Virus record (IMG/VR): IMGVR_UViG_3300020202_000061
Location: 248,001 to 312,000 of that record
Reading direction: 5' to 3' (one strand)
DNA: 64,000 bases
Part shown: positions 2,618-43,674 of the stretch, in pieces
Position numbering within the stretch: the first letter of the stretch is position 1
Layout: each line of letters begins with the position of its first letter
Program-made: the position numbers and the translations under genes
Notes under the pieces: generated by a model
What the model saw: only the letters and a program-made list of their open reading frames with translations
Database searches by the model: none
Told to the model about the DNA's origin: nothing

Positions 2618-3165
2618 TGAATGAACTTATCTGGTTTGGAATCTCTCTGGTCCTGGTATTTCTGAGCACGATGATCGCGCTCACCGGTCAACTCTCGACG
2701 GTATCGCGTTGGTCTGTGATCCTGTTGTTCGCGGGATTCATCGGATGCGGCGGCCTCACTGCGGTGAACCTGCTGTCCCGTCCCATGCCCATCGCCTGGT
2801 ACCAGTCTCTGCCGTGGAATCCCGAACTCAACGGGGTTCAGGTCATCGGATACTCCCAGGATCAGGGCGAGGCCATCTACTTGGTCATCAAGGTTCCGGG
2901 CTCTGAGAAGCCCGTGAGCCTGATTCTACCCTGGTCCGATAAGACCGCCGAGAGCGGAGATTCCGCCATGGTCAACCTGGAGAAGGCCGGACCCGGCGCG
3001 GAATTGATGTTCTCCGCTGGCGGTCAGGGACCGGCTGGAGGCGTCGGCACGTTCCAGGTCGGATATCCCCAACCTCTTCCAGAGAAGGAACCCGTCCGGT
3101 CTGAGGAAACCATCAATCTGAACGCTCCGGCGGTGCCCGCACAGATGCCGAACGAAACCCCTTGA
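2617..3165 (+). CDS. membrane protein, third gene of the TolQ-like operon
   Basis: 2 N-terminal TM, LSRP.P, AIYL, LPWS; TGATG coupling. Confidence 0.7.
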   Translation: MNELIWFGISLVLVFLSTMIALTGQLSTVSRWSVILLFAGFIGCGGLTAVNLLSRPMPIAWYQSLPWNPELNGVQVIGYSQDQGEAIYLVIKVPGSEKPVSLILPWSDKTAESGDSAMVNLEKAGPGAELMFSAGGQGPAGGVGTFQVGYPQPLPEKEPVRSEETINLNAPAVPAQMPNETP

Positions 3166-3190
3166 CATTCCCGAGAGTATCATCTAAATA
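3162..3190 (+). promoter_or_regulatory. tRNA promoter
   Basis: TTGACA-N17-TAAATA. Confidence 0.75.
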
Positions 3191-3207
3191 CCCGTCACCA
3201 AACATAT

Positions 3208-12528: not shown

Positions 12529-13181
12529 TGTTGAAGTGGTTTGGAAAAAAAGAGACCCCTCCGGCACCTGCTCCGACTCCCGTGGTGGAACAGAAAAAGA
12601 TTTGGTTTCGGGTGGAGTTTCACCGCGCCGAGGATGGCTCGGTCTATCACGAGGTTCAGACGGATCGTCGTTTTTTCGAGGATTTGGACCGCAAGTTCAA
12701 GGATCAGGACATCGCCTATGATCCTCTCATGGACGAGAAAACCAAGGTGGCCGTGTTTCTGCACGACTACCTGATGAAGACCATGGAGTATGATCGTCTG
12801 GTCCGCAACTTCATGTCGATGATCGGTGAACCCTATTTTCGTGTGTTGGTCGGACGTAAAACAAAGTCCACCGAGGTCACGGTGGATTCCGATTACAACA
12901 AACACCTGATCTACGATCTGGATAAAATTTATGCCAAGAATAAGGCTCCGTATGATCCGAACGCCGAGGAGCACGTGAAGATTGCGGTCTACCTCTATGA
13001 CATCGTGAACCAGATCGCTCGTCAACACCTCCCCGAGGACGAGGAGGAATTCACCCCTGATGATCCCATGATCAACATTCCTGCCCTGGCCGTACGTGGT
13101 GGGCAGGAGGTTAGGACCGTGGTGGACCTTGGCAACATCAATCCCGAACAGACCGGAACCATAGTCGATGTCCGACAATAA
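12528..13181 (+). CDS. hypothetical protein with internal duplication
   Basis: Repeated DLD....YDP..E..K.AV.L.D unit. Confidence 0.8.
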   Translation: MLKWFGKKETPPAPAPTPVVEQKKIWFRVEFHRAEDGSVYHEVQTDRRFFEDLDRKFKDQDIAYDPLMDEKTKVAVFLHDYLMKTMEYDRLVRNFMSMIGEPYFRVLVGRKTKSTEVTVDSDYNKHLIYDLDKIYAKNKAPYDPNAEEHVKIAVYLYDIVNQIARQHLPEDEEEFTPDDPMINIPALAVRGGQEVRTVVDLGNINPEQTGTIVDVRQ

Positions 13182-13749
13182 GATCGTTTTCATCCGCCAT
13201 GGCGAATCCATGGGTAATGTGTGGGTGGGCGCTTACAAGAACGAAGCGGCAAATTTTCTGACCATCCGTGGGGTGAAACAGGTCGAGCTTGCTGCCATCG
13301 ATCTGATCCGCCGTAACATCCGATTCGATCACGTAGTTACGTCCGGCTTGACCCGCGCTCGCCAGACCGCAACCACCCTGATGCAGACCATGGACGATTG
13401 GCAACGTCATTACGTGGTCGAGCCGCGCCTGAATGAGTGGGTCAAAGTTGGATACGTTCATGATCCCAGCATTCTGGTTCAGGATCGCAAGGATTTCATC
13501 CAGCGCGTGACCGACGCCTACAAGGAGGTGATTGCCCCACTGGACGGGAATGTCCTAGTGGTCTCTCACTTCTTTGTGATGGAGGTGCTGTTCGAGCTTC
13601 TGGGATTCGGTGAGTACGGGAAAATCATTCACCAGCTTCCGAATGATTGGATTCCGAACGCTGTCCCCTACGTGTATGAACCGGGTAATTCCTGGCGTGT
13701 CCCTCGTCTGACCATGATCCACGCTTATGTGCCAGAGCCCCAGTACTAA
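13168..13749 (+). CDS. histidine phosphatase superfamily protein
   Basis: FIRHGES, LT..G..Q, S.L.RA.QT, LNE, VLVVSH. Confidence 0.92.
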   Translation: MSDNKIVFIRHGESMGNVWVGAYKNEAANFLTIRGVKQVELAAIDLIRRNIRFDHVVTSGLTRARQTATTLMQTMDDWQRHYVVEPRLNEWVKVGYVHDPSILVQDRKDFIQRVTDAYKEVIAPLDGNVLVVSHFFVMEVLFELLGFGEYGKIIHQLPNDWIPNAVPYVYEPGNSWRVPRLTMIHAYVPEPQY

Positions 13750-13770: not shown

Positions 13771-13956
13771 ATGTTGATCGAAAACAACCAACCCAACAAA
13801 TTTTCCATCGGCGATTTTGTGCGCGTGAAATACACCGGACAGACCGGAAAAATCACGGGTTACGTCGATGGGAAGTGGATTGTGCAAGTGCAAAACGGTA
13901 GACCCCTCCAAGAGGTCGCCGAGAATCTCGTTCCCACGCAGGTGCTGCTGGGATGA
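13771..13956 (+). CDS. small KOW/SH3-like protein
   Basis: FSIGDFVRVK..GQTGKI; TAAATA upstream. Confidence 0.7.
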   Translation: MLIENNQPNKFSIGDFVRVKYTGQTGKITGYVDGKWIVQVQNGRPLQEVAENLVPTQVLLG

Positions 13957-14141
13957 GTGAGACTTGGCCCGGTTGGATCAGAGCGGTGTGGCCCGCCACA
14001 AAGCTTGTTCTCATTCGTAATGAAAATATGAACAAGGAAATCCGCGTCAGCAACGACCAGATCACTGGTCGAATCGTCATGCACGCTCATTGTCAAGTTA
14101 CGGAAACTCCGGATTCTCCGGTATCAGTTGTGATCAACTGA
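13953..14141 (+). CDS. hypothetical protein
   Basis: ATGA coupling. Confidence 0.5.
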   Translation: MSETWPGWIRAVWPATKLVLIRNENMNKEIRVSNDQITGRIVMHAHCQVTETPDSPVSVVIN

Positions 14142-14319
14142 ACATTTTTCCCACACTCCGAAAGTTATTTTTACATCGTGATCTAAAAGGTTTCTATGTT
14201 TAACGGAAACCCCTTGATGTGATCATTAAAGACCTTATGTTACGCTATATACTAAGAGGCACCGAGGGTTTCAGATGCCTCTATGGGGATTCCAAATCAA
14301 CAACGGGGTCGAACAACGA

Positions 14320-16254
14320 ATGTCTAATCTCTTCGCGGATTTCAAGACAACTTTCGAAAAAACCAGGAAAACCGAACTCTCTCTCCAGGAATACTTGGAC
14401 CTGTGCAAACAGGATCGAATGGCTTACGCCTGGGCGGTGGAGAGAATGCTGGCGGCTATCGGCGAGCCCAAGCTAGTTGACACGTCCGAGGACCCGCGCC
14501 ATTCCAGAATCTTCCTGAACCGCACCATCAAGGTGTATGACGTGTTCAAGGATTTCTACGGGATGGAGGCGACCATCGAAAAGATCGTCGCCTTCTTCAT
14601 GAAGGCCGCTCAAGGTCTGGAAGAGAAGAAGCAGGTTCTCTATCTGATGGGGCCGGTTGGATCGGCTAAGTCCTCTCTGGCAGAGCGTCTCAAGGCTCTG
14701 ATGGAGAAGATGCCGATCTACGTGCTCAAGGCGGGTGATCAAATCAGCCCGGTGTTCGAGAATCCCTTGGGTCTGTTCGATCCGAACGTGTGGAGTGATC
14801 GCCTCCAAGAGGAATACGGGATTCCTCGTCGTTATCTGACCGGGTTGATGTCGCCTTGGGCGGTAAAGCGCCTGAACGAGGACTTCGACGGGGATATCAG
14901 CAAGTTCAGTGTGGTGAAGCTCTACCCGAGCAAGCTCAAGCAGATAGCGATCTCCAAGGTCGAACCCGGTGACGAGAACAACCAAGACATTTCGTCTCTG
15001 GTCGGTAAGGTTGATATCCGCAAGCTGGCGGAGTTCTCCGCTCGTGATACCGATGCCTACAGCTACTCCGGTGGTCTCTGCTTGGCCAACCAGGGCGTGC
15101 TGGAGTTCGTCGAGATGTTCAAGGCACCGATCAAGATGCTGCATCCGATGCTCACCGCGACCCAGGAGGGCAACTACAACGGCACCGAGGCGATCTCTGG
15201 TATTCCGTTCCAGGGTGTGATTCTGGCCCACTCCAACGAATCCGAATGGGAGTCGTTCAAGAGCAACAAGAACAACGAGGCATTCCTCGACCGCATCAGC
15301 ATCATCAAGGTCCCTTACTGCCTGCGTGTCACGGACGAGACCAAAATTTACCAGAAGCTCTTGCGTGATTCGTCCCTGGACAAGGCTCCATGCACACCCA
15401 AGACGCTGGAATTGCTCTCCCAAATGAGCGTGCTTTCCCGTCTGATCTATCCGGAGAACTCTTCGATCCATTCGAAGATGAAGGTCTACGATGGTGAGAA
15501 CATCAAGGAAACCGATCCCTACGCCAAATCTGTTCAGGAATATCGTGAACTGGCCGGGGTCAACGAGGGTATGACCGGTCTCAGCACCCGCTGGGCTTTC
15601 AAGGTGCTGTCATCGGTGTTCAATTATGATCCGAACGAGATCGGCGCGAATCCGGTCCATCTGTTCCGTATCTTGGAGGACAAGATCACTGAGGAACAAT
15701 TCCCGAAGGAAGTCGAAGAGGACCTTCGTGAACACCTCCAGTGGATCAAGGCCAAGTACATCGATTTCATCGGCAATGAAATCCAGGTTGCCTACCTGGA
15801 GTCCTACACCGAATACGGCCAGAACATGTTCGACCGCTACATCGTCTATGCGGATCATTGGATCGAGGATCGGGACTATCGTGATTCCGAGACCGGCGAG
15901 ATGTACAACCGCGAAACCCTGAATAAGGAACTCGAAAAGATCGAGAAGCCCTCCGGTATCGCGAATCCCAAGGAATTCCGTAACGAGGTGGTCAACTACT
16001 CTCTCCGTTACAAGGCCAACCACGGCAAGTATCCGAGGTGGAACTCCTACGAGAAGCTCAAGGAAATCATCGAGAAGAAGATGTTCGCGAACATCTCTGA
16101 TCTCCTGCCGGTGATCTCGTTCGAGAAGAAATCCTCCGAGGAGCACGAGAAGAAGCACAAGGATTTTGTGCAGCGCATGAAAGAGAAGGGATACAGCGAG
16201 CGCCAGACCCGTATCGTCGTGGACTGGTTCATGAAGGTACAGAAGTCCAACTGA
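14320..16254 (+). CDS. prkA: PrkA/YeaG family AAA+ serine kinase
   Basis: GPVGSAKSS P-loop, EPGDENNQDIS, ANQGVLEFVEMFKAPIK.LHP, HSNESEW, NNEAFLDR; alternative start 14275. Confidence 0.97.
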   Translation: MSNLFADFKTTFEKTRKTELSLQEYLDLCKQDRMAYAWAVERMLAAIGEPKLVDTSEDPRHSRIFLNRTIKVYDVFKDFYGMEATIEKIVAFFMKAAQGLEEKKQVLYLMGPVGSAKSSLAERLKALMEKMPIYVLKAGDQISPVFENPLGLFDPNVWSDRLQEEYGIPRRYLTGLMSPWAVKRLNEDFDGDISKFSVVKLYPSKLKQIAISKVEPGDENNQDISSLVGKVDIRKLAEFSARDTDAYSYSGGLCLANQGVLEFVEMFKAPIKMLHPMLTATQEGNYNGTEAISGIPFQGVILAHSNESEWESFKSNKNNEAFLDRISIIKVPYCLRVTDETKIYQKLLRDSSLDKAPCTPKTLELLSQMSVLSRLIYPENSSIHSKMKVYDGENIKETDPYAKSVQEYRELAGVNEGMTGLSTRWAFKVLSSVFNYDPNEIGANPVHLFRILEDKITEEQFPKEVEEDLREHLQWIKAKYIDFIGNEIQVAYLESYTEYGQNMFDRYIVYADHWIEDRDYRDSETGEMYNRETLNKELEKIEKPSGIANPKEFRNEVVNYSLRYKANHGKYPRWNSYEKLKEIIEKKMFANISDLLPVISFEKKSSEEHEKKHKDFVQRMKEKGYSERQTRIVVDWFMKVQKSN

Positions 16255-16265
16255 GGGCTATCATA

Positions 16266-17555
16266 GTGACCACGGTCATTGACAGACGTAAGACCGACCG
16301 CCAGAAGAACCTCTCCAATAGGCAGAGGTTCATCAAAAGAGCCAAGGAAGCGATCAAGAAGTCGATCCGTGGAGCCATCCTCAATAAGGATCGCTCGATC
16401 AAAGACTCATCCGGCGGTAATGTTCGAATCCCCAACAAAGGGACGACAGAGCCGAATTTCCGCAATGGAGACGGTGGTCGTAAGATCATCGTTCGTCCGG
16501 GTAATCCAGGCACTGTGCCGGGTGACAAGATTCCACGTCCCAGAAAGGATCAGACTTCGGGCCGTGGTAACAGTGATCCATCCAAAGACCCCGCTGAGTT
16601 GATGGATGAGTTCGAGTTCACGCTGACCCGTGAGGAATTTCTGGACTTCTTCTTTGAGGACCTGGAATTGCCCAACTTGGTCAAGACCGCCCTCAAAGAG
16701 GTGGTCGAGTACAAATGGTCCCGTTCGGGATTTGCCTCGGTCGGTATGCCGTCGAATCTCGACATTACCCGAACCTTCATCAATTCGATGGGTCGCCATT
16801 TCGCTCTGGCCGGAGCCTACCAGAAAAAGATCGACGAACTTCGCGCTAATGGTGGATCGGAAGAGGATATCGCGCTCTGGGAGAAGAGGAAGCGGACCAT
16901 CCCGTTCATGGATGACGTGGACCTGCGCTATCGCCTGTTTGTGAAGCAGCCCAAGCCGATCACCAAAGCGGTAATGTTCTGTCTGATGGACGTATCTGGC
17001 AGTATGGGCGAGTACGAGAAGGACTTGGCCAAGCGTTTCTTCATGCTCCTCTACATGTTTCTGGAGCGCAAATACGAGTCGGTCACCGTGGTGTTCATCC
17101 GTCATACCACCGAAGCCAAAGAGGTGGACGAGCAGGAGTTCTTCTACTCGAAAGAATCAGGTGGAACCGTGGTCAGCACGGCTCTGGAAATGACTGCTGA
17201 TCTGATTCAGCGGCGCTTCAACAGTTCAGACTACAACATCTACGTGAGCCAGTGTTCGGACGGCGACAATGCCTACGATGACAACTCCGTGTGCACCCAG
17301 ATCATCCGTGAGGATATTCTGCCTTATGTCCAGTATTTTGCGTATGTCCAGGTCGGACATCAGCGCGATGAGATGGCCAACATGTGGGGTGTGTTTGCGG
17401 GTCGTCTTGGGAACACCACGAGCACGAATTCCCTCTACGAGGTTTATAAGGAGATCGAGAAGAATACCTCCCATTTCAAGGTGAAGAACCTGAATGGTCC
17501 TGCCGACATCTACCCGGTGTTTCGCGAACTCTTTGAGAAGGACATCAAGGTATGA
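16266..17555 (+). CDS. yeaH: YeaH/YhbH (DUF444) vWA-like protein
   Basis: IDRR, NRQRF, AVMFCLMDVSGSM, FIRHT, SGGT, SDGDN. Confidence 0.96.
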   Translation: MTTVIDRRKTDRQKNLSNRQRFIKRAKEAIKKSIRGAILNKDRSIKDSSGGNVRIPNKGTTEPNFRNGDGGRKIIVRPGNPGTVPGDKIPRPRKDQTSGRGNSDPSKDPAELMDEFEFTLTREEFLDFFFEDLELPNLVKTALKEVVEYKWSRSGFASVGMPSNLDITRTFINSMGRHFALAGAYQKKIDELRANGGSEEDIALWEKRKRTIPFMDDVDLRYRLFVKQPKPITKAVMFCLMDVSGSMGEYEKDLAKRFFMLLYMFLERKYESVTVVFIRHTTEAKEVDEQEFFYSKESGGTVVSTALEMTADLIQRRFNSSDYNIYVSQCSDGDNAYDDNSVCTQIIREDILPYVQYFAYVQVGHQRDEMANMWGVFAGRLGNTTSTNSLYEVYKEIEKNTSHFKVKNLNGPADIYPVFRELFEKDIKV

Positions 17556-19042
17556 GCCTGCTCTGGAATGATAATGAATGGACTTTCCCGCTCATCGACA
17601 AGGTCTACAAGGAGATCGAGCAGATCGGCGTGGGTGAGATGGGTCTGGACATCTTCCCGAATCAGATCGAGGTCATCAGCAGTGATCAGATGCTGGACGC
17701 TTATGCAAGCCATGCCATGCCAGTCATGTATAAGCACTGGTCCTTTGGCAAGTCGTATTCGGTCAACAAGAAACTCTATGAGAACGGTCAGCAGGGTCTG
17801 GCCTACGAGGTCGTAATCAACTCGAATCCCTGCATTGCCTATCTCATGGAGGACAACACCATGACCATGCAGGCTTTGGTCATGGCCCATGCCAGCATCG
17901 GTCACAACAACTTCTTCAAGACTAACTACCTGTTCCAGCAGTGGACCGATCCGGATGGGATCATCGACTACCTGATCTTCGCCAAGAATTATGTGGCGAA
18001 GTGTGAGGAGCGATACGGTGCCGAACGAGTCGAGGAAGTTCTCGATTCCTGTCACGCTCTCATGGACCAGGGTATGGACCGCTTTAAGCGAGCCCGCAAA
18101 CGTTCCCGTCAGGAGGAGAAGCTCCGTGCGGCCGAACGTGAAGCCTATCACCAAAGTCGTGTGAGTGAGCTTTGGCCGGACACCTGGAAGTCCGAGACCC
18201 CGGCCCAGAAGGAAGAACGCAAGAAGCGGATTCTTCCGGAGCCCGAGGACAACATCCTCTACTTCATCGAGAAGAACTCGCCGATCCTGGAGCCGTGGGA
18301 ACGAGAGATCGTTCGTATCGTCCGTAAGGTATCGCAGTATTTCTGGCCTCAGATGCAGACCCAGGTCGGTAATGAGGGCTGGGCCACCCATACCCATTAC
18401 TTCATTATGAATCGTCTCTACGAGAAGGGTCTGATCTCGGACGGTTCTCTGTTGGAGTTCTTCAAGTCCCACACGGGCGTTATCGCGCAGTATCGCATGC
18501 AGCGTCTGAACCCGTACTGCCTGGGATTCAACATTTTCCGCGACATCAAGCGTATGTGCGAGAAACCCACCGATGAGGATCGTGAATGGTTCCCCGATCT
18601 GGTCGGGATGAACTGGCTGGAAGCCGCGAAGGACGCGCGTGAGAACTACAAGGATGAGAGCCTGATCCTCCAGTACCTCAGCCCCAAGGTGATCCGCGAT
18701 CTTAAGCTTTTCTCGATCCTGGATGATTACGGCACGGACTCGATGAACTATATCGTCCAGAACATCCACGACCGGGAAGGCTACAAGGAAGTTCGTCGAT
18801 CCCTCTCTCGCAACTACGACATCAACATGAGAATTCCACAGATTCAGGTGTCGGATGTCAATGTGGATGGGGATCGCAAACTGATCCTTCGCCATACCCG
18901 TCACAACTATGTGCCGCTGGATCAGGCCGATCTCAAGGAAACTCTCCTCCATGTGAGGCGTCTCTGGGGGTTTGCGGTGCGTCTGGACTTCTACAATCCC
19001 GGCGCGGTCAGTCCCACGGATTGGGTAGCGGTGGGTGAATAA
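17552..19042 (+). CDS. spoVR: SpoVR/YcgB family protein
   Basis: HWSFGK, LAYEVVINSNPCIAYLME.N, AH...GHN.FFK.N, NEGWA, NPY.LG. Confidence 0.96.
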   Translation: MSLLWNDNEWTFPLIDKVYKEIEQIGVGEMGLDIFPNQIEVISSDQMLDAYASHAMPVMYKHWSFGKSYSVNKKLYENGQQGLAYEVVINSNPCIAYLMEDNTMTMQALVMAHASIGHNNFFKTNYLFQQWTDPDGIIDYLIFAKNYVAKCEERYGAERVEEVLDSCHALMDQGMDRFKRARKRSRQEEKLRAAEREAYHQSRVSELWPDTWKSETPAQKEERKKRILPEPEDNILYFIEKNSPILEPWEREIVRIVRKVSQYFWPQMQTQVGNEGWATHTHYFIMNRLYEKGLISDGSLLEFFKSHTGVIAQYRMQRLNPYCLGFNIFRDIKRMCEKPTDEDREWFPDLVGMNWLEAAKDARENYKDESLILQYLSPKVIRDLKLFSILDDYGTDSMNYIVQNIHDREGYKEVRRSLSRNYDINMRIPQIQVSDVNVDGDRKLILRHTRHNYVPLDQADLKETLLHVRRLWGFAVRLDFYNPGAVSPTDWVAVGE

Positions 19043-19082
19043 GTTTTGACAAACCCAAGGGTTTTGGGGTAGAATAGAATTC

Positions 19083-19334
19083 ATGATCTTCGATCTGGAA
19101 CACGCTCGAAAGGCTCGTAAGAAAGGCTCCGGAAGTCTGCTCAAGGAGTGGATTCCAACCTCGCCCCAAGTGGTGGAGGATTTCCGAGTCGGCGACAAGG
19201 TGAAGTTCCGCGACGGCAAGACCGGCACCATTCTGTGCTTCGGAGCGAGTTCCATGCGGGGACCATTACTGGCCCTGGTCGCTGTGAATGGTGTCAACTA
19301 CACCTGTCCGATCTCGGAACTCCGCTCGGCCTAA
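19083..19334 (+). CDS. small SH3/KOW-like protein
   Basis: FRVGDKVKF..GKTGTI; own promoter upstream. Confidence 0.65.
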   Translation: MIFDLEHARKARKKGSGSLLKEWIPTSPQVVEDFRVGDKVKFRDGKTGTILCFGASSMRGPLLALVAVNGVNYTCPISELRSA

Positions 19335-19337
19335 CCC

Positions 19338-19366
19338 TTGACAATTCCAAGATTGCGGAATAAATA
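19338..19366 (+). promoter_or_regulatory. tRNA promoter
   Basis: TTGACA-N17-TAAATA. Confidence 0.75.
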
Positions 19367-19372
19367 AGCGTT

Positions 19373-23042: not shown

Positions 23043-23192
23043 ATGGTAGAACGAGGCGACAAGATCACCCTGAAAGAGGCGATTGCGGAAGCGCAACGCG
23101 GAACTCTGAAACAGCGAGTCGCCCGACATCGCAAACGCCTGAAACGCAAGTATGGACTCGGACCCAAGCCGAAACGCTCCAAAACCCCTTGA
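23043..23192 (+). CDS. small basic protein (49 aa)
   Basis: MVERGDKIT...RHRKRLKRKYG...TP*. Confidence 0.55.
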   Translation: MVERGDKITLKEAIAEAQRGTLKQRVARHRKRLKRKYGLGPKPKRSKTP

Positions 23193-23217
23193 CATCCTCG
23201 GGGTTATCCTCTAAATA
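23189..23217 (+). promoter_or_regulatory. tRNA promoter
   Basis: TTGACA-N17-TAAATA. Confidence 0.75.
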
Positions 23218-23226
23218 CCCCGTTAT

Positions 23227-23450: not shown

Positions 23451-23975
23451 ATGAACGTGATCAAACCACCGCGTCCACTGACAGGGATTGATGAGTTTTT
23501 ACCCATCTTGTTCCTGGCCGGGACCATCGACATGGGCGATTCCGTGGATTGGCAGGCTGATACCGCCACCCGTCTCAAGCAGTATCCGGGCACCATCCTG
23601 AATCCGCGTCGTGACGCCTGGGACAAGTCCTGGAACCAGGACATTAACAATCCTGAGTTTGCGTATCAGGTCAATTGGGAACTCGATGGTCTGGACATGG
23701 CCACGCTGATCCTGATCAACTTCGAACCGGATTCGAAGTCCCCGATCTCATTGTTGGAGCTAGGGCTCCACGCGAATGACCGTGGTCTGATCGTGCGCTG
23801 CCCCAAGGGCTATTGGCGTAAGGGTAACGTGGACATCGTCTGCGCCCGCCATCGTGTGCCGGTCTATGAGGACCTGGATCAAGCCGTGGCCGAGATCACG
23901 GTGCGTCTGCAAGCCCAACAGAAATCAATTACCAGTTTCTACCACCAGATGGCCGTGGACACAGGTCAGGCATAG
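23451..23975 (+). CDS. nucleoside 2-deoxyribosyltransferase-like protein
   Basis: FLAGTID, WQ, LNPRR..WD, QVNWE, SPISLLELG, YWRKGNV. Confidence 0.88.
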   Translation: MNVIKPPRPLTGIDEFLPILFLAGTIDMGDSVDWQADTATRLKQYPGTILNPRRDAWDKSWNQDINNPEFAYQVNWELDGLDMATLILINFEPDSKSPISLLELGLHANDRGLIVRCPKGYWRKGNVDIVCARHRVPVYEDLDQAVAEITVRLQAQQKSITSFYHQMAVDTGQA

Positions 23976-24940
23976 ACCTCGGCATCGTGATTCGGTGCGG
24001 TGTCGAAGATCGACAACTCCGTGATCGTCTTGAGCACGGTCAGACCGAGGTCCTCTCTCAGGTGATAGAGCATGGTCTTGAGGTTGTCATCGTAGGCCGA
24101 CTTCGTGATTCCCGCGTGCCTATAGGTGAGGATCAGCGGAGCGTTCTGCTTGGCACGGTTGACCGACATGAACAGGGCGTAGCGTTCCTGATCTTCATCC
24201 TTGAAGGAGAGATCGACAGCCTGTCGGATGATATCCTCCGCTCCGGGCGTGACGATCTCGATATGGGTTTCCAGATACACACCGGGCTCTCCGCCCACGG
24301 GCTTCCCCTCGGTCTCTAACTGCTTGATGATGGGATGCCAGGGTAGAGTCTCGATCTTTTGTCGAACCACATTGAGCATGGTATGGCGAGTGAGATCGTA
24401 GACCAGCTTCGTCATCACATCCATGGCTTCCTGCTGGGTTCCGAACACCACCTTCGAACACATCACATCGGCCTTGAACGGGTCATACCCACGAAGCACA
24501 TGATAGGGCTCGATATCCAGGCATTTCATCTCGTTTCGGAAACAGAAGTCTCGGAACGCAAATAACACCTCTTCGTGATTCAACACTTCCGAACCCACCG
24601 TGATGTGAATCTCGAACGGGATGGGAAACTTGACGGTGCCTTCCTGTGCCTGTAAACCGCTCCACTTATTCATTTTTGTGCGAAGCATGTCGTCGAGGTC
24701 TTGATCGTTGAACCCGAGCGAGTATCCGATGCTGAGTGCGGCCAGGATCACATCCGCAACTTCATCCAGGACGTGATGACGTGAGGTCAATCGGTGCAGG
24801 GTGTCGGGTGCGCCCTCCAGTGGGAGAATGGCCTGATTGAGTTCACCAGTTTCGGCCGCCAGCTTGTTACCCTTCTGACCGAGTGTCTTACGGTCGCGCT
24901 CGGTGAGAACCTTGATGAAATCCAGAGTTTCCTGACGCAT
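23966..24940 (-). CDS. MazG-like NTP pyrophosphohydrolase fused to an unknown domain
   Basis: ETGEL...DEVADVIL; C-terminal FEIHITV, RQKIE, LETHI. Confidence 0.75.
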   Translation of the reverse strand: MRQETLDFIKVLTERDRKTLGQKGNKLAAETGELNQAILPLEGAPDTLHRLTSRHHVLDEVADVILAALSIGYSLGFNDQDLDDMLRTKMNKWSGLQAQEGTVKFPIPFEIHITVGSEVLNHEEVLFAFRDFCFRNEMKCLDIEPYHVLRGYDPFKADVMCSKVVFGTQQEAMDVMTKLVYDLTRHTMLNVVRQKIETLPWHPIIKQLETEGKPVGGEPGVYLETHIEIVTPGAEDIIRQAVDLSFKDEDQERYALFMSVNRAKQNAPLILTYRHAGITKSAYDDNLKTMLYHLREDLGLTVLKTITELSIFDTAPNHDAEVYA

Positions 24941-32598: not shown

Positions 32599-32686
32599 GG
32601 AGAGTAAACCCCTGAGGTTGGGGTGCCGCCTGGAAAGCGGTCAGGACCTGAAAGGGTCTACGGTTCGAGTCCGTTGCTCTCCTCCA
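32599..32686 (+). tRNA. 8/4-fold tRNA-Ser(GGA), allo-tRNA-like
   Basis: 8-bp acceptor GGAGAGTA/TGCTCTCC, 4-bp T-stem ACGG/CCGT, long V-arm, loop CTGGAAA, U73, CCA. Confidence 0.8.
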
Positions 32687-32694
32687 AGCCTTTT

Positions 32695-32785
32695 GGAAGA
32701 TTGGCAGAGTCTGGTAATGCGCCCGCCTCGAAAGCGGTGGCCTACCTCATGGGTAGCGGGGGTTCAACTCCCTCATCTTCCGCCA
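32695..32785 (+). tRNA. tRNA-Ser(CGA)
   Basis: Class II cloverleaf, loop CTCGAAA, G73, CCA. Confidence 0.93.
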
Positions 32786-32879
32786 GCATGGCCGTTCCTG
32801 GAACCCTTGAAGTTCCGATTGGTGGCCGTCAAACCGCTCGGGAGCGGGCTGAATCTGAAAAGGACCAGCGAACACCCAT

Positions 32880-32971
32880 GGAGGGTTGACAGAAAGGCTA
32901 TTGTGCCGGTCTTGAAAACCGTGGCTGACCTCAGAAGGGTCATGGGAGTTCGAATCTCTCACCCTCCGCCA
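32880..32971 (+). tRNA. tRNA-Ser(TGA)
   Basis: Class II cloverleaf, loop CTTGAAA, G73, CCA. Confidence 0.93.
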
Positions 32972-32972
32972 A

Positions 32973-33377
32973 ATGGATCAATTCTCTATCGGCTGGCTCG
33001 CTGGAATTATTGACGGTGAAGGCACTGTCACAATTGACAAAGAATCCAATCGTTATCGCCGACCAGTCATAAGCGTATCATCTACAGACATCGAGATTTT
33101 GAACCGTATTCAGGGAATGATCGGTGGCAGTATAACTGTGAAAAATCGTGAACGAGCGCCACATCACAAACTAGCATATATGTGGAAGATGCATGGTTCT
33201 CAAAAAGTGATTGAGGTTTTGAAAATCATTGCTCCGCATATGAGTTGTCCGAAGAAAAAGAATCGAGCAAATTTCATCCTTGAGAATTACCGAACGCTAA
33301 CACCTCGTAATGGAAAATATACCGAACAAATGAGAATAGATCGTCTCCAATTTGAAGAACAGTTTTTTCATGTCTGA
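32973..33377 (+). CDS. free-standing single-motif LAGLIDADG homing endonuclease
   Basis: GWLAGIIDGEGT; AT-rich; starts 1 nt after the tRNA CCA. Confidence 0.88.
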   Translation: MDQFSIGWLAGIIDGEGTVTIDKESNRYRRPVISVSSTDIEILNRIQGMIGGSITVKNRERAPHHKLAYMWKMHGSQKVIEVLKIIAPHMSCPKKKNRANFILENYRTLTPRNGKYTEQMRIDRLQFEEQFFHV

Positions 33378-33738
33378 GTTAGGAGATCAGATAATTGCTG
33401 GCATCATTAGTGGTGTGATTACCGTTATTATATTAGGTCTTTCGAATTATCTATTTGCCACGAAGATTCATATCTACGATTGGTTATATCCATTCCCACT
33501 CGAATTCCAATTACTACAATCAATGACGTGGGATAAAATGACTCTTCCGGCCGGGCAAATCATTCGCCTTCGTCTTACTGCATGGGAATTACGCTCGATA
33601 CCTCCTGATGAATGGATTGACTTTTTACTATGGGACCCATATCTAAACCAATACAACCATCATCCTGATCTACGACATCCGGCAACATATTTCAAAACGG
33701 GATCGTTGATGAAAAGGATTGATTGGAGATTTTGTTAA
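33370..33738 (+). CDS. membrane-anchored hypothetical protein
   Basis: N-terminal TM, AT-rich. Confidence 0.7.
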   Translation: MSELGDQIIAGIISGVITVIILGLSNYLFATKIHIYDWLYPFPLEFQLLQSMTWDKMTLPAGQIIRLRLTAWELRSIPPDEWIDFLLWDPYLNQYNHHPDLRHPATYFKTGSLMKRIDWRFC

Positions 33739-34073
33739 TGCCAATCATCGTTGAAACTATAATCATCGGAATCATCGTGTTTGTGATCGGTTCGCTCATT
33801 CTGAGTGGAATCCAAGCCCTGTTCAAGAAAAAGCAATGACCTCGGTGATCCTCTTCCTGGGTCTGATCGGGATCATTTACTCGGCCGCGACTCTCATCGA
33901 CCAACCCTATCGCACGTGGTGGGGGAATCTCGTTCTGTTTGGTGTGCTCATGGGATCGCTCTGTGCGATTATCTACGGGATTTCTGGTTCGCAAAATATT
34001 CCGCATTGATCATTGACACCGGGTAACCCTGGGATTACATTTGAGACCGTAGTGTAATCCGTGGGGGAATCTA

Positions 34074-35849
34074 ATGGGTGGTTTGCTATTTCTGGCATTT
34101 GGGCTCGTTGCCCTTCTTTTGATCGGAGCATTCGCTCCGAATTTCATTCACAAAATCCTTACCAGCAAAGAATCGGAGCCGAGCAAGCTCCTGGTTCAGG
34201 CTCCGCGTGTCATCGCGTGGGGTGTGATGGTGGTGTGGGTTCTCAGTCTCTCGTTCGTGCACGTACCGATTGGTCAAGTCGGTATGTTGAACCTGATCTG
34301 GGGTGCCGAGCGTGAGCAGGGCGCGATCCTCGCTCGTAGTGGAAGTCAGCGTGGTCCGCAGACCGATCTTCTCGGACCCGGAACCAAATTCATCCCGTTC
34401 GTGCACGTGCTGTATGACGTGGAGACGGCCGATCAGTTCGTGGTGCCGGATGGCTTCTACGGCCTATTGACGGCCAAGGATGGCGCTCCGATGCCAGCGG
34501 GTCAGTATGTGGCTCCGGCCTGGAAGGAAGGCACAGAGAGCGAAATGCTCGACGCCGCCACGTTCCTCACCAAGGGCGGGATCAAGGGTCCGCAACTCTA
34601 CGTGCTGACGCCGGGTATCTACCCGCTGAACACCTACCTGTGGGACGCTCGCACCGAGGCTGCTTCCGATACCAATTCCGGAACAAGGGCCACAATCATC
34701 CCGGCTGGTTCCGTGGGTGTGGTGAAGTCGAACGTGACCGATCCCGGTATCGTCTGCAAGCAGGTCGAGGAAAAGGTGGACACAACCGTGGCCCACGATT
34801 CGAACGCGCTCTCCGCGCTACTCGTTCCGAAGGGTTGCACCGGTATCTGGAATGAAGTGCTGACGCCGGGTGCGTATTACCTGAACCGTCTCGCCTATCA
34901 GGTGACCATCGTCGATACGCGTGTTCAAACTCTCCAGTACGCTGGTGGTTACGACTCGCGCAAGATCGAACTGAATGTCGGCCTGGACGGCAAGATCGAG
35001 CAAGCCGAGTCCGCGTCCAAGATCAGCACGCCCGAAGGTGCAGCGGATTCCGCGATCAACGTGAAGGTTGGTTCCTGGGTGGTTCATCAGGACCTCAGGA
35101 TGGTGATCCAGGTCAGTCCGGAAAACGCCCCCATCGTGGTGGGTGCGGTCGGTGGACTCAAGCAGATCGAGGATTCCATCGTGACCCCGGCGGTGCAGTC
35201 GGTCGTGCGTGACGTGATGGGCGGCCTGCTGTTGTTCCCGAGCGAAACCGTCGCACGTCAGGTTGAGATCAACGATCTGATCGTGAACCGCGAATTCATC
35301 CAGAGCGTGATCGAGGATCGTATCCGCGCCGAGGGGGCCAAGGCGGGTTTGTCCGTGCGTGAGGTTCGTCTGGCCAATCCGGACATTCCGCCCGAAATGC
35401 TTCTCGGCAACAAGCGTGAGCAGCTTGCCCAGCAGATGAAGCAGGCGTTCGAGCAGGAAGAAGTTACGCAGACCCAGCGTATCAAGGTGGAGCAGGCCAA
35501 GGCCACTGCCGATCAGCAGGAATCCCTGGTGACCGCGCAGATCGGCGTGGAAGTCTCCAAGCTGACCATCAACAAGCGCACCAACGAGGGTCAGGCCGAA
35601 CAGGCTTACCTGGAAGCGCTCGCTGCGGGTCAGAAGGCCCAGGCTTTGGTCCTGGGCGAAGAGAACGTGCTGATCCTGAATATGGTCGATAAGGTCCTGG
35701 CTAGTCTCGGAAAGAACCCGGAAATCCTGGGCTCGATCAAGCTGCCCTCGACCATGGTCATGGGAGGCGGTTCGTTTGAGGGGGTGGCGGCAATCGTGAA
35801 GGACGCGCTCGGGGGAGCGCCTCGTTCCGAAGCGAAGCTGCCACAGTAA
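34074..35849 (+). CDS. SPFH/Band-7 (flotillin-like) domain protein
   Basis: 2 TM, GPQ...L.PG repeats, PAVQSVVRD, IP..., C-terminal coiled coil. Confidence 0.85.
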   Translation: MGGLLFLAFGLVALLLIGAFAPNFIHKILTSKESEPSKLLVQAPRVIAWGVMVVWVLSLSFVHVPIGQVGMLNLIWGAEREQGAILARSGSQRGPQTDLLGPGTKFIPFVHVLYDVETADQFVVPDGFYGLLTAKDGAPMPAGQYVAPAWKEGTESEMLDAATFLTKGGIKGPQLYVLTPGIYPLNTYLWDARTEAASDTNSGTRATIIPAGSVGVVKSNVTDPGIVCKQVEEKVDTTVAHDSNALSALLVPKGCTGIWNEVLTPGAYYLNRLAYQVTIVDTRVQTLQYAGGYDSRKIELNVGLDGKIEQAESASKISTPEGAADSAINVKVGSWVVHQDLRMVIQVSPENAPIVVGAVGGLKQIEDSIVTPAVQSVVRDVMGGLLLFPSETVARQVEINDLIVNREFIQSVIEDRIRAEGAKAGLSVREVRLANPDIPPEMLLGNKREQLAQQMKQAFEQEEVTQTQRIKVEQAKATADQQESLVTAQIGVEVSKLTINKRTNEGQAEQAYLEALAAGQKAQALVLGEENVLILNMVDKVLASLGKNPEILGSIKLPSTMVMGGGSFEGVAAIVKDALGGAPRSEAKLPQ

Positions 35850-39645: not shown

Positions 39646-39759
39646 ATGGTATCGCTAATTTGTGTGATATTGTTTGCGTGGTGGCTGTGTGATCTCGGCC
39701 TTCGAATTCTGGAGCATCGTCGCCAGAACAAATTCTGGGAAACTCGTAGATCATGGTGA
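39646..39759 (+). CDS. 37-aa single-TM microprotein between plcP and agt
   Basis: MVSLICVILFAWWLCDLGLRILEHRRQNKFWETRRSW*; fills the gap and overlaps the next start. Confidence 0.5.
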   Translation: MVSLICVILFAWWLCDLGLRILEHRRQNKFWETRRSW

Positions 39760-43568: not shown

Positions 43569-43587
43569 CAGCACCTATCGACCACAT

Positions 43588-43664: not shown

Positions 43665-43674
43665 AGTAAACCGA

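What the first reader, a model, noticed from the sequence alone, without database searches (positions are those of the whole stretch)
14320..19042. Complete PrkA(YeaG)-YeaH-SpoVR module in a phage
Seen: three intact coupled genes after an AT-rich gap of about 180 nt. Established: this AAA+/vWA/SpoVR trio is a bacterial stress and nitrogen-starvation or dormancy module with a poorly known mechanism. Inference: the phage reprograms starved hosts. This fits a starvation theme with PlcP-Agt and the MazG-like gene.
Basis: partly seen in the sequence, partly recalled or inferred. Interest (0 to 1): 0.62.

Follow-up and report, generated by a model that had tools for sequence, protein, structure and literature searches.

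The report
Phage-borne starvation proteolysis operon (PrkA-YeaH-SpoVR)
A 347-kb soil jumbo phage carries an intact, strongly conserved copy of the bacterial PrkA-YeaH-SpoVR operon, which recent work ties to bulk protein breakdown in starving cells, and the same operon turns up in many unrelated phages, so phages may use it to digest their host's proteins for raw material.

Summary
prkA (14320-16254), yeaH (16266-17555) and spoVR (17552-19042) are intact, tightly coupled and pass curated equivalog cut-offs. They follow a 178-nt, 40% GC gap.

The carrier is a real T4-like jumbo phage with a Gp23 capsid protein, T4 portal, PolB and many tRNAs. An independent soil sample holds the same sequence across both junctions, so it is not a chimera.

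The operon is under purifying selection as strong as the phage's own polymerase (dN/dS 0.05-0.09). It sits in an all-phage clade with no close bacterial donor (at most 67% identity). The same gene order occurs in 71 of 80 IMG/VR loci, in at least four phage backbones from 47 kb to about 640 kb.

Literature from 2024-2026 makes YeaG the key to non-specific starvation proteolysis and shows that pure PrkA has no protease activity of its own.

New here:
- SpoVR's predicted fold resembles zinc metallopeptidases. This rests on structure only and the catalytic Glu is missing.
- Phage YeaH and SpoVR are predicted to bind (0.81 against 0.00 in the best control).

Best reading (about 45%): the phage fires host proteome recycling from its own promoter to feed virion synthesis. 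This window is a new member of a known kind, in an understudied viral context.

The parts
14124..14150 (+). Terminator-like hairpin plus T-run that closes the upstream transcription unit
   Evidence: stem TCAGTTGTGATCAACTGA followed by ACATTTTTCC. It lies at the end of the conserved 62-aa ORF 13953-14141.
14142..14319 (+). AT-rich intergenic region and leader of the operon (178 nt, 40.4% GC)
   Evidence: for length and composition; only a few blocks are conserved with the sibling phage L086.
14207..14222 (+). Conserved upstream box AAACCCCTTGATGTGA. It shares its first part with the phage's strong promoter family AAACCCCTTGACA-N17-TAAATA.
   Evidence: TTGATGTGA is conserved in G000, L086 and L174. 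The AAACCCCTTGA word recurs in the intergenic regions of the genome.
14246..14252 (+). Conserved TATATAC element, a candidate -10, lying 25-26 nt after the TTGATG box in all three related phages
   Evidence: The promoter class and timing are unresolved. The simple sigma-70 scan found no site here.
14252..14286 (+). Leader hairpin directly after the TATATAC element. A hairpin of different sequence sits at the same place in L086 and L174.
   Evidence: The fold of the whole 90-nt leader is not better than shuffles (z -0.45), so the case rests on conserved position only.
14320..16254 (+). prkA (yeaG/spdA homolog), 644 aa: AAA+ domain plus helical C-terminal domain. The P-loop is GPVGSAKSS (nt 14650-14676).
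   Evidence: It keeps 236 of 259 positions that are near-invariant in bacteria. dN/dS is 0.091 against L086.
16266..17555 (+). yeaH (DUF444/YhbH family), 429 aa, GTG start: vWA domain with MIDAS residues D242, S244, S246 (nt 16989-17003), T301 and D334
   Evidence: It keeps 83 of 88 near-invariant positions. dN/dS is 0.065.
17552..19042 (+). spoVR (ycgB homolog), 496 aa, with invariant AHAxxGH (residues 112-118, nt 17885-17905) and further invariant His/Glu/Asp residues. The predicted fold is zincin-like.
   Evidence: It keeps 105 of 113 near-invariant positions. dN/dS is 0.045.
19046..19075 (+). Strong sigma-70-like promoter (TTGACA-N18-TAGAAT, 11 of 12 matches) that starts the next unit and so marks the 3' end of the operon
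   Evidence: The next ORF starts at 19083.

Best explanation
This is a functional, virus-adapted copy of the bacterial PrkA(YeaG/SpdA)-YeaH-SpoVR(YcgB) operon, carried by a T4-like soil jumbo phage as a host-takeover module.

Proposed mechanism:
1. The phage transcribes the three genes as one unit from its own promoter, so expression does not depend on the host's RpoS/NtrC starvation signalling.
2. The three proteins assemble. PrkA is an ATP-driven AAA+ unfoldase. YeaH is a vWA/MIDAS adaptor. SpoVR is a metal-dependent partner that may be the missing hydrolase.
3. Together they switch on the bulk, non-specific breakdown of cytoplasmic host proteins that bacteria normally reserve for starvation.
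4. The released amino acids and the ATP from their catabolism feed the very large protein demand of the phage in nutrient-poor soil hosts. This would be the protein counterpart of host-DNA degradation by T4.

Shown here: the genes are intact, viral, selected, inherited as a unit and widespread in phages, and YeaH and SpoVR are predicted to bind.
Taken from the literature: YeaG is required for starvation-induced bulk proteolysis, pure PrkA is not itself a protease, and the three genes act in one pathway.
Inferred: the operon does the same job when expressed by a phage, SpoVR is the catalytic partner, and the benefit to the phage is a supply of resources.
For: The genes are intact and viral.

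Not a chimera:
- GC3 is 0.69-0.75 against 0.70 for polB.
- Syntenic relatives L086 (409 kb, 93% identity) and L174 (75%) share the arrangement.
- An independent soil run tiles flank, trio and downstream junction with 0 mismatches.

Selection: dN/dS is 0.091, 0.065 and 0.045 at dS 0.6-0.9, against 0.069 for polB. The proteins keep 91-94% of the residues that are near-invariant in bacteria, including the Walker A Lys-Ser, the MIDAS motif and the SpoVR His/Glu cluster.

Long residence in phages:
- No bacterial protein is above about 67% identity.
- The window falls in an all-phage clade with 99-100% support in all three single-gene trees and in the concatenated ML tree.

Breadth:
- 71 of 80 IMG/VR loci have the full trio in order, and the other 9 are cut by contig ends.
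- 18 of 49 records also carry Gp23, among them complete genomes with terminal repeats of 363 kb and 176 kb.
- Contexts include T4-like replication genes, terminase/Acb1/ClpS/NAD salvage and a 47-kb PolA phage with a ClpP-like gene right after spoVR.
- It is also in Ralstonia phage RsoM2USA and in huge phages.

Neighbours typical of auxiliary genes: PhoH follows spoVR in 15 of 88 viral loci and 0 of 81 bacterial loci, and NAD-salvage genes flank the trio in viral loci only.

Regulation: conserved phage-type upstream elements, a terminator before the operon and a promoter after it.

Mechanism from the literature:
- YeaG-dependent non-specific proteolysis supplies amino acids and ATP (PMC13684143).
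- Bulk recycling is not due to ClpP, Lon, HslV or FtsH (PMC11246515).
- Pure PrkA is a clade-III AAA+ protein with neither protease nor kinase activity (PMC13001217).
- yeaG, yeaH and ycgB are co-fit in six bacteria (10.1101/072470).

New structural hints:
- The SpoVR model (pLDDT 84) returns an almost uniform list of MA-clan metallopeptidases, Z 12.7 to 6.7.
- The helical PrkA C-domain returns nothing coherent.
- YeaH-SpoVR complex: score 0.81 against a best control of 0.00. That mark was reached by 58 of 80 solved complexes and 2 of 110 mismatched pairs. The runs share at least 82% of contacts and the partner pLDDT is at least 83.
Against: - There is no expression data. No RNA run holds the sequence, and the promoter class and timing are unresolved.
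- The SPD paper tested only yeaG, in E. coli, and does not say which protein cuts.
- SpoVR as the peptidase is weak. Foldseek finds nothing significant. The profile-profile comparison with the top structural family is null, at 0.3% probability. The zincin catalytic Glu position is an invariant Ala. Helical models can give inflated Z-scores.
- Reported SPD flux is only a few percent of the proteome per hour, which may be too slow to matter within a lytic cycle.
- Non-specific proteolysis would also hit phage proteins.
- The host is unknown.
- The bacterial sample for the trees is limited to the 80 best-matching proteobacterial species, so the deeper viral clades could have unsampled bacterial relatives.
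Confidence: 0.45

Rival explanations
1. Signalling kinase. PrkA acts as a Ser/Thr protein kinase, as its name says, and the phage uses it to phosphorylate host proteins and rewire metabolism, in the way T7 uses its Gp0.7 kinase. YeaH and SpoVR would be accessory regulators.
For: This is the historical annotation. E. coli YeaG was reported to autophosphorylate and to phosphorylate isocitrate lyase AceA (as cited in PMC9512850, and in 10.1101/072470). The Pfam and NCBIfam names say 'serine protein kinase'.
Against: No kinase activity was found for B. subtilis or B. anthracis PrkA, and the putative kinase P-loop is degenerate (PMC9512850; PMC13001217). The model of the window's C-terminal domain is an all-helical bundle with no kinase match (best Z 5.1, heterogeneous list). 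The bulk-proteolysis phenotype of a yeaG deletion is not easily explained by one kinase substrate.
Confidence: 0.13
2. Keeping the host alive. The module is used to keep a starved, infected cell viable and energised through a very long latent period, or to hold the infection in a dormant or pseudolysogenic state until nutrients return, and not mainly to harvest building blocks.
For: The main measured benefit of SPD in E. coli is survival and energy balance during starvation (PMC13684143). The cultured relative RsoM2USA has the longest latent period reported for a jumbo phage, 270 min (PMC8504454). The phage comes from soil. The operon is linked with PhoH and NAD salvage in other phages.
Against: This overlaps the main explanation and cannot be separated from it by sequence. 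No lysogeny genes were seen next to the operon. The 47-kb PolA phage that carries the trio looks like a lytic type.
Confidence: 0.17
3. Interference. The phage copies mix with or out-compete the host's own PrkA/YeaH/SpoVR and damp down host starvation proteolysis, which protects phage proteins from non-specific degradation in already-starved cells.
For: SPD is non-specific and would also degrade phage proteins. The window's P-loop differs from all 81 bacterial copies at two otherwise invariant glycines (GGGKS to GSAKS), and 30 other viral-contig copies carry such variants.
Against: The same GSAKS P-loop occurs in the solved PrkA homolog 9xip, so it is a natural state and not a defect. About two thirds of the viral copies (58 of 88) keep GGGKS. 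All three full-length genes are kept under strong purifying selection, with the Walker Lys, MIDAS and SpoVR invariant residues intact. That is more than a poison subunit would need.
Confidence: 0.08
4. Sporulation manipulation. As viromics papers read 'spoVR', the phage would push its host into or out of endospore formation.
For: The family names (SpoVR, YhbH) come from Bacillus sporulation. An OMZ virome study read viral spoVR this way (PMC8940887). Bacillus phages carry YhbH-like fragments.
Against: The nearest bacterial homologs are all non-sporulating Proteobacteria. The cultured carrier infects Ralstonia. The proteins match the proteobacterial equivalogs and not the sporulation ones: TIGR02877 scores 229 against a cut-off of 468.
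Confidence: 0.02
5. Artefact or passenger. The trio is host DNA joined to phage DNA by mis-assembly, or a recent neutral pick-up with no role.
For: IMG/VR does contain such cases. L013, L014, L028 and L034 nest inside bacterial clades. In the deposited Enterobacter phage LAU1 record, yeaG-yeaH sit at the very end of the record.
Against: For this window the composition matches the phage, three related phages share the synteny, an independent sample holds the same sequence, dN/dS is 0.05-0.09, and there is no close bacterial donor.
Confidence: 0.02

Closest known systems
Bacterial yeaG(spdA/prkA)-yeaH-ycgB(spoVR) starvation operon of Proteobacteria
   Same: It has the same three families in the same order, with similarly short spacers (72 of 80 bacterial loci have this arrangement). 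All three proteins pass the NCBIfam equivalog cut-offs. They are about 65% (PrkA), 45% (YeaH) and 52% (SpoVR) identical to bacterial copies and keep 91-94% of the near-invariant residues.
   Different: It is encoded by a virus and lies in an all-phage clade outside both bacterial crown clades. The upstream region carries phage-type conserved elements in place of the RpoS-dependent control reported for E. coli (PMC13684143). The P-loop is GSAKS, whereas GGGKS is invariant in the 81 bacterial copies.
Ralstonia jumbo phage RsoM2USA ORF30-ORF29-ORF28 (MG752970)
   Same: It is a cultured 344-kb T4-related jumbo phage with the same trio in the same order (55%, 37% and 50% identity) and the same GSAKS P-loop. 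PolB is among the window's nearest (33.6%).
   Different: It is only distantly related. Its trio falls in a different, deeper viral clade. GenBank annotates the genes as hypothetical. The paper lists ORF28 and ORF30 only as BLAST rows and does not discuss them.
Thermus phage PrkA/vWA/SpoVR sets (phiYS40, TMA, MN1, phiLo, Lalka)
   Same: These are cultured phages that carry homologs of all three families close together.
   Different: They are very distant (23-33% identity, partial coverage) and the gene order differs (vWA-SpoVR-PrkA in Lalka8). They were not included in the trees.
Classic phage auxiliary genes for starved hosts (PhoH, MazG, NAD-salvage NAMPT/NMNAT; T4 host-DNA degradation)
   Same: These are host-derived physiology genes kept by large lytic phages. 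PhoH and NAD-salvage genes are direct neighbours of the trio in many viral loci. The logic is the same: recycle host macromolecules for phage synthesis.
   Different: Those are single enzymes acting on nucleotides or cofactors. This is a three-gene machine that would act on the proteome. That role is inferred and not shown.
AAA+ metalloproteases FtsH/YME1 and MoxR-vWA pairs (RavA-ViaA type)
   Same: PrkA was modelled as a clade-III AAA+ protein like YME1 (PMC13001217). It is paired with a vWA/MIDAS protein, as MoxR ATPases are (from my own knowledge). SpoVR's model resembles zinc peptidase folds.
   Different: The parts are three separate proteins. SpoVR lacks HExxH: the motif is AHAxxGH, with Ala where the catalytic Glu would be. 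There is no sequence-profile link to zincins. Membership is not claimed.

Membership tests
PrkA/YeaG family (NF011999; PF08298 + PF06798) | Full-length match above the curated equivalog cut-off, with both domains present | tested here: met
   The NF011999 score is 1116.3 against a cut-off of 576, over model positions 2-643 of 644. PF08298 E 4e-170 and PF06798 E 3e-63.
PrkA/YeaG family (NF011999; PF08298 + PF06798) | Walker A P-loop with the catalytic Lys (B. subtilis K108 is needed for ATPase activity and function) | tested here: met
   The P-loop is GPVGSAKSS at residues 111-119, with Lys-Ser kept. The two preceding Gly of the bacterial GGGKS are Ser-Ala, as in the solved homolog 9xip (PMC9512850).
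PrkA/YeaG family (NF011999; PF08298 + PF06798) | ATPase activity and a requirement for bulk starvation proteolysis | not testable with these tools
   This needs biochemistry or genetics. It is known for E. coli YeaG (PMC13684143) and B. subtilis PrkA (PMC9512850).
YeaH/YhbH (DUF444, PF04285; NF003707) | Full-length match above the curated cut-off | tested here: met
   PF04285 E 9e-143 over positions 2-417 of 418. NF003707 scores 507.3 against a cut-off of 396.
YeaH/YhbH (DUF444, PF04285; NF003707) | vWA domain with MIDAS residues (DxSxS ... T ... D) | tested here: met
   D242, S244, S246, T301 and D334 are invariant across 45 viral and bacterial sequences. The vWA fold itself was not modelled.
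SpoVR/YcgB (PF04293 + PF24755; NF008737) | Full-length match above the curated cut-off | tested here: met
   PF04293 E 5e-161 and PF24755 E 4e-21. NF008737 scores 736.5 against a cut-off of 679.
prkA-yeaH-spoVR operon (one pathway) | Three genes on one strand in this order with short spacers | tested here: met
   An 11-nt spacer and a 4-nt overlap. The same order is found in 72 of 80 bacterial and 71 of 80 viral loci.
prkA-yeaH-spoVR operon (one pathway) | The three products work together | tested here: inconclusive
   All three genes give the same nearest-neighbour order in trees. The YeaH-SpoVR complex prediction passes at 0.81 against a best control of 0.00. PrkA's contacts were not tested. 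Co-fitness is known from bacteria only.
prkA-yeaH-spoVR operon (one pathway) | Starvation control by host RpoS (and NtrC/sigma-54) | tested here: not met
   The upstream region holds elements conserved among the related phages (TTGATGTGA ... TATATAC). The -35-like half is shared with the phage's own promoter family. No conserved sigma-54 element is present, and the GGCAC-like word in G000 is deleted in L086. RpoS dependence cannot be read from sequence with certainty.
Phage auxiliary / host-takeover gene | Encoded inside a genuine virus genome, not in a host flank | tested here: met
   Gp23 capsid protein, T4 portal, PolB and tRNAs, viral genes on both sides, syntenic relatives and an independent sample.
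Phage auxiliary / host-takeover gene | Maintained by selection in the virus | tested here: met
   dN/dS is 0.045-0.091 at dS 0.6-0.9, like polB. The viral clades are deep.
Phage auxiliary / host-takeover gene | Expressed during infection, with an effect on host physiology | not tested
   No RNA run holds the sequence, and the phage is uncultured.
MA-clan zinc metallopeptidases (considered for SpoVR) | Zincin catalytic-domain fold | tested here: inconclusive
   In the exhaustive VIA search, nearly all of the top 50 are MA-clan peptidases, Z 12.7-6.7, with 160-200 residues aligned. Foldseek finds nothing significant. The model is helical, and Z can be inflated for helical folds.
MA-clan zinc metallopeptidases (considered for SpoVR) | HExxH (or HExxGH) zinc-binding and catalytic motif | tested here: not met
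   The invariant motif is A-H-A-x-x-G-H. The two His are spaced as in M49 HExxGH (from my own knowledge), but the Glu position is an invariant Ala.
MA-clan zinc metallopeptidases (considered for SpoVR) | Sequence-profile similarity to a zincin family | tested here: not met
   hhalign of the SpoVR alignment against DUF885, the top structural hit family, gives 0.3% probability and E 0.23.
Known anti-phage defence systems (PADLOC) | A match to any defence-system protein model | tested here: not met
   No hit at E <= 0.01 for the three proteins or the three upstream ORFs.

The most novel reading that the evidence does not exclude
PrkA, YeaH and SpoVR together form a previously unrecognised three-part ATP-dependent protease: an AAA+ unfoldase, a vWA/MIDAS adaptor that plugs into SpoVR, and a zincin-like metal hydrolase. 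This would be the 'missing' bulk proteolysis pathway of bacteria. Phages from 47 kb to about 640 kb have carried their own lineages of it for a long time and fire it on demand to cannibalise the host proteome for amino acids and energy.
Probability: 0.22. Interest if true: 0.85.

Novelty: new member of a known kind. Interest (0 to 1): 0.64.

Why it matters
There are two reasons.

First, it bears on how lytic phages build hundreds of large virions inside starving, non-growing cells, the normal state of soil and ocean bacteria. T4-type phages are known to recycle host DNA, but no equivalent is known for host protein. A portable operon that is now tied to non-specific starvation proteolysis, kept under strong selection in many unrelated phages and sitting next to PhoH and NAD-salvage genes, is a concrete candidate.

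Second, the bacterial pathway itself is only half solved. YeaG is required, pure PrkA does not cut, and the four classical ATP-dependent proteases are not responsible. The phage versions are compact, free of host regulation and self-contained, so they are convenient reagents for finding which protein is the protease. The predicted YeaH-SpoVR complex and the peptidase-like model of SpoVR give direct, inexpensive experiments.

It also corrects a common viromics habit of counting viral 'spoVR' as a sporulation gene.

Tried and rejected
- Megablast of the locus against deposited phages found no match. The close relatives are only in metagenomes.
- Terminase_6N and Phage_sheath_1 Pfam models gave no hit in the genome. 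I used the Gp23 and T4 portal models instead.
- The genome has no ClpS or ClpP, so there is no extra proteolysis gene in this phage.
- PADLOC found nothing.
- The simple sigma-70 scan found no promoter in the gap. My first reading, TTGATG-N16-TATGTT as the promoter, was dropped because L174 does not conserve the TATGTT part.
- The fold of the whole 90-nt leader is not better than shuffles.
- I first took the GSAKS P-loop for a virus-only state. I rejected that when the solved homolog 9xip turned out to have it.
- For SpoVR, Foldseek against the PDB gave nothing significant. The protein atlas by features gave nothing outside the family. hhalign against DUF885 was null. No paper links SpoVR to peptidases.
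- For the PrkA C-domain there was no coherent structural match.
- No RNA run was found, so expression is untested.
One record, L027, was not held.
- I did not use the large representative-protein search (as the operators advised) or any alternative genetic code.
- Read laying was kept to 6,000 letters.
- PrkA-YeaH binding was not tested. The pair exceeds the size limit uncut and only one complex job was allowed.

Full report
**1. What is in the sequence**

The window holds three same-strand ORFs at 14275/14320-16254, 16266-17555 and 17552-19042.
- They match AAA_PrkA + PrkA_C, DUF444 and SpoVR + SpoVR_C over their full lengths.
- Each passes the curated NCBIfam equivalog cut-off: 1116 against 576, 507 against 396, and 736 against 679.
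- prkA and yeaH are separated by 11 nt that contain GAGGG. yeaH and spoVR overlap in ATGA.
- The gap in front (14142-14319) is 178 nt at 40.4% GC, in a genome of 54.5%. A terminator-like hairpin with a T-run lies just before it, and a near-consensus promoter (TTGACA-N18-TAGAAT, 19046-19075) lies just after spoVR. The trio therefore looks like a transcription unit of its own.
The 45 nt between the upstream ATG (14275) and 14320 are conserved as DNA in the sibling phage, but two compensating 1-nt indels change the encoded peptide. Three further relatives begin at the equivalent of the second ATG.

**2. It is a phage, and the join is real**

- The window is G000:248001-312000 of a 347,504-bp IMG/VR record rated 90% complete by CheckV.
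- The genome encodes a T4-type major capsid protein (E 2.7e-81) and a T4 portal (1.2e-63).
- The window has a phage family-B DNA polymerase 2.6 kb upstream of prkA (phrog_262, E 7e-170) and 18 tRNA genes.
- GC (0.53-0.54) and GC3 (0.69-0.75) of the trio match the polymerase (GC3 0.70).
- A 409-kb metagenomic contig (L086, PrkA 93% identical) and a 15.7-kb contig (L174, 75%) share the same gene order: GapR, PolB, two ORFs, a histidine phosphatase, two small ORFs, then the trio.
- The sequence is found in soil metagenomes of two studies. In the one that may be the source, a single 76-kb contig spans 13400-19399 with no difference. In the independent one, small contigs with no mismatches tile the flank, the three genes and the downstream junction at an even depth of about 4-6x.

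**3. Selection and integrity**

- Against L086, dN/dS is 0.091 (prkA), 0.065 (yeaH) and 0.045 (spoVR) at dS 0.6-0.9. The phage polymerase gives 0.069.
- Of the positions that are at least 98% invariant in 71-81 bacterial homologs, the window keeps 236 of 259, 83 of 88 and 105 of 113. Most changes are conservative.
- YeaH keeps the MIDAS residues D242, S244, S246, T301 and D334.
- The PrkA P-loop is GPVGSAKSS, whereas all 81 bacterial copies and 117 of the 120 best database hits have GPVGGGKSS. Variants (SA, SS, AA) occur in 31 of the 88 viral-contig copies, the window's included, across several clades.
- I first read this as a viral peculiarity. However, the only solved relative (PDB 9xip/9xiq/9xir, E 2e-52) has the same GSAKS, so it is a natural state of deep PrkA lineages and not a defect.

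**4. Where it came from**

- The best bacterial PrkA is about 66-67% identical, spread evenly over alpha-, beta- and gammaproteobacteria. Only five database proteins are closer, and the four whose contexts I read (P0001-P0004) lie on phage contigs.
- In FastTree trees of each protein, and in an IQ-TREE tree of the concatenation (62 rows, 1,538 columns), the bacterial sequences fall into two tight crown clades and need only 2-5 label changes.
- The viral sequences form several deep clades. The window sits with L086, L087 and L089/L004 in an all-phage clade with 99-100% support. All three genes give the same order of nearest neighbours, so the operon has been inherited as a unit.
- A few IMG/VR contigs (L013, L014, L028, L034) do nest inside bacterial clades and are probably host contamination. 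In the deposited record of Enterobacter phage LAU1, yeaG-yeaH sit at the very end of the record and look like a host flank.
- Caveat: the bacterial sample is the 80 species closest to the query, all but one labelled Proteobacteria. This is adequate for the window's clade but not for the deeper viral clades.

**5. How widespread it is in phages**

- A pattern scan of IMG/VR found 103 contigs with a PrkA relative. Of the 80 that were fetched, 71 carry all three genes in the same order and the other 9 end too soon.
- Of 49 records searched, 18 have a Gp23 capsid gene above the cut-off on the same contig. These include genomes with terminal repeats (362,810 bp and 176,134 bp) and a 363,531-bp record rated 100% complete. 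Most of the rest are fragments rated below 30% complete.
- The surroundings differ between phages:
 - T4-like clamp, clamp loader, RegA and dUTPase (L087);
 - terminase, RecA, Acb1, ClpS and RNase T on one side with NadE, NAPRTase, Nudix and NMNAT on the other (L089);
 - a 47-kb record rated complete, with Dam, a Gp2.5-like SSB, a family-A polymerase and a YqaJ exonuclease before the trio and a ClpP-like gene right after spoVR (L064).
- Among deposited phages the full trio is in Ralstonia jumbo phage RsoM2USA (genes 30-29-28, annotated hypothetical) and in three huge-phage records of about 640 kb. Thermus phages carry a distant vWA/SpoVR/PrkA set.
- PHROGs already holds families for all three proteins, labelled 'unknown function'.
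- PhoH follows spoVR within 0.2-1.9 kb on the same strand in 15 of 88 viral loci and in none of 81 bacterial loci. NAMPT and NMNAT-Nudix genes flank the trio in viral loci only. The bacterial flanks were shorter (4.5 kb against 8 kb), which weakens the NAD-salvage comparison.

**6. Regulation**

- The genome has a promoter family, AAACCCCTTGACA-N17-TAAATA, which often lies in front of tRNA genes.
- The prkA leader shares the first half (AAACCCCTTGATGTGA, 14207-14222). It also has a TATATAC element (14246-14252) 25-26 nt further on. Both are conserved in G000, L086 and L174 while the rest of the gap has diverged.
- A hairpin of different sequence follows directly in each of the three phages.
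- The class and timing of this promoter are unresolved. What can be said is that the control region is the phage's own and does not look like the host arrangement. In E. coli, yeaG is under RpoS control (PMC13684143).

**7. What the module does, from the literature**

- E. coli recycles bulk cytoplasmic protein under nitrogen limitation. None of ClpP, Lon, HslV or FtsH is responsible, and the authors conclude that 'a major proteolysis pathway ... remains to be discovered' (PMC11246515).
- In October 2026, YeaG (renamed SpdA) was shown to be required for starvation-induced, largely non-specific degradation of more than a third of cellular protein. This supplies amino acids and ATP for new protein synthesis. 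The paper does not mention YeaH, YcgB or phages (PMC13684143).
- B. subtilis PrkA was reported to be a slow ATP-dependent, Lon-like protease (PMC9512850). Highly purified B. anthracis PrkA, however, has no protease or kinase activity. It forms oligomers with ATP and is modelled as a clade-III (YME1-like) AAA+ protein with a pore loop, and the earlier activity may have been a contaminant (PMC13001217).
- Taken together, PrkA looks like an unfoldase that lacks its peptidase.

**8. New structural hints obtained here**

- *SpoVR fold.* An AlphaFold2 model of the window's SpoVR from a 45-sequence alignment is confident (pLDDT 83.9, pTM 0.82). Foldseek finds nothing significant. The exhaustive VIA search returns a nearly uniform list of MA-clan zinc metallopeptidases: DUF885 Z 12.7, M1 aminopeptidases 11.1-10, LTA4H 10.7, M49 9.6, M32, M3, thermolysin 8.7 and LasB 8.0.
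- *SpoVR topology and motif.* Beta strands lead into a long helix that carries the invariant A-H-A-x-x-G-H, which fits a zincin layout. But the catalytic Glu position is an invariant Ala, and a profile-profile comparison with DUF885 is null. I therefore do not file SpoVR as a zincin. It is a candidate metal hydrolase.
- *Control.* The helical C-terminal domain of PrkA, modelled the same way (pLDDT 78.5), gives only weak and mixed hits (best Z 5.1), with no kinase and no protease.
- *YeaH-SpoVR complex.* The complex test for the window's YeaH and SpoVR passes. The score is 0.81 against a best control of 0.00. That mark was reached by 58 of 80 solved complexes and 2 of 110 mismatched pairs. The runs share at least 82% of contacts and the partner pLDDT is at least 83. 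My own alignments were used, so the calibration counts hold only roughly.
- *Interface.* The conserved N-terminal part of YeaH (1-26, 60-91) is placed against SpoVR, including residues next to its invariant His/Glu/Asp cluster (100, 115, 161, 165, 168-173). Neither family has a solved structure, so recall of a known complex is unlikely. The model supports binding but does not show it.

**9. Best explanation and rivals**

- *Best explanation (about 0.45).* The phage expresses the operon from its own promoter to set off bulk host proteolysis independently of host starvation signalling, and so gains amino acids and energy for virion production in nutrient-poor hosts.
- *Points against.* There is no expression data. 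SPD flux in E. coli is only a few percent of the proteome per hour. Non-specific proteolysis would also hit phage proteins. The identity of the protease is unknown.
- *Rivals.* A signalling kinase (0.13). Keeping a starved host alive through a long latent period, which overlaps the main reading (0.17). Damping host proteolysis (0.08). Sporulation control (0.02). Artefact or passenger (0.02).
- PADLOC gives no defence-system match.

**10. Novelty and score**

- The operon itself is a plain member of a known bacterial family. Phage copies already sit in databases and in one table of a phage genome paper. A broad comparative study of jumbo phages does not mention them, and a virome study counted viral spoVR as a sporulation gene.
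- For this window the rating is therefore 'new member of a known kind'.
- Three things are not in the literature I could search: the picture of old, selected, widely spread viral lineages of the whole operon; their linkage with PhoH and NAD salvage; and the link to the newly described starvation proteolysis.
- This makes two open questions testable with simple experiments. One is what the bulk protease is. The other is how phages provision themselves in starved cells. Interest: 0.64.

Noticed in passing
window 3149-3195, 19325-19371, 23176-23222 (also G000 128207, 237934, 176220, 206017): A phage promoter family, AAACCCCTTGACA-N17-TAAATA, recurs in the genome. Three copies in the window lie just upstream of tRNA genes (tRNA-Asn 3208, tRNA-Ile 19372, tRNA-Thr 23227). 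The 11-mer AACCCCTTGAC would be expected about 0.2 times by chance in this genome.
   Followed up: partly
window 239-44969: 18 tRNA genes are scattered through the window, including clusters of Ser (32599-32971) and Arg/Lys/Ile (43492-44969). This is typical of XacN1/RsoM2USA-like jumbo phages.
   Followed up: no
window 38898-39644 and 39753-40745: A Metallophos phosphoesterase is followed by a GT4 glycosyltransferase. Only the domain families were confirmed.
   Followed up: partly
window 23966-24940 (-): A MazG-like pyrophosphatase (phrog_1247, E 1e-15). The Pfam MazG-like hit is below its cut-off.
   Followed up: no
G000 317616-318728, 320508-322124, 323699-324448 (outside the window): The same phage encodes NMNAT-Nudix, NAMPT and PhoH about 55-60 kb from the trio. 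In other phage lineages their homologs are the direct neighbours of the trio.
   Followed up: yes
L008/L009 10153-11145: In a 135-kb and an 89-kb viral contig, a second Gp23-like capsid-protein gene lies between prkA and yeaH (a 1.7-kb insert). This is an odd place for a structural gene paralog.
   Followed up: no
L064 12269-13048 and 15203-15865: In a 47-kb PolA phage rated complete, a Metallophos gene is inserted between yeaH and spoVR, and a ClpP-like gene (phrog_1827, E 2e-15) follows spoVR directly. It could be a proteolysis partner or simply the prohead protease.
   Followed up: partly
LR756502.1 (642 kb): prkA-yeaH at 273882-277130, spoVR at 519989-521401: In this huge phage the operon is split, with spoVR about 243 kb away from prkA-yeaH. 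In its relatives LR745206 and LR756504 the three genes are close together.
   Followed up: no
MN688132.1 (Enterobacter phage LAU1) 1-3308: This deposited 'complete genome' of a 30.8-kb lambdoid phage starts with yeaG-yeaH, and its PrkA groups with Vibrio and enterobacterial copies. This is most likely a host flank of a prophage and not phage cargo.
   Followed up: partly
window 13168-13749: A histidine phosphatase superfamily (branch 1) gene lies upstream of the trio. It is conserved in that position only in the three closest relatives (G000, L086, L174), and only its N-terminal half matches the family.
   Followed up: no
window 33001-34000: There is a local drop in GC to 0.42 in a 54.5% GC genome, just after the tRNA-Ser cluster and before an SPFH/Band-7 gene (34074-35849). 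It is unexplained.
   Followed up: no
window 49873-51321 (-): A 482-aa protein with an Amidoligase_2 domain (E 8e-7). Such domains are linked to peptide tagging or modification systems.
   Followed up: no
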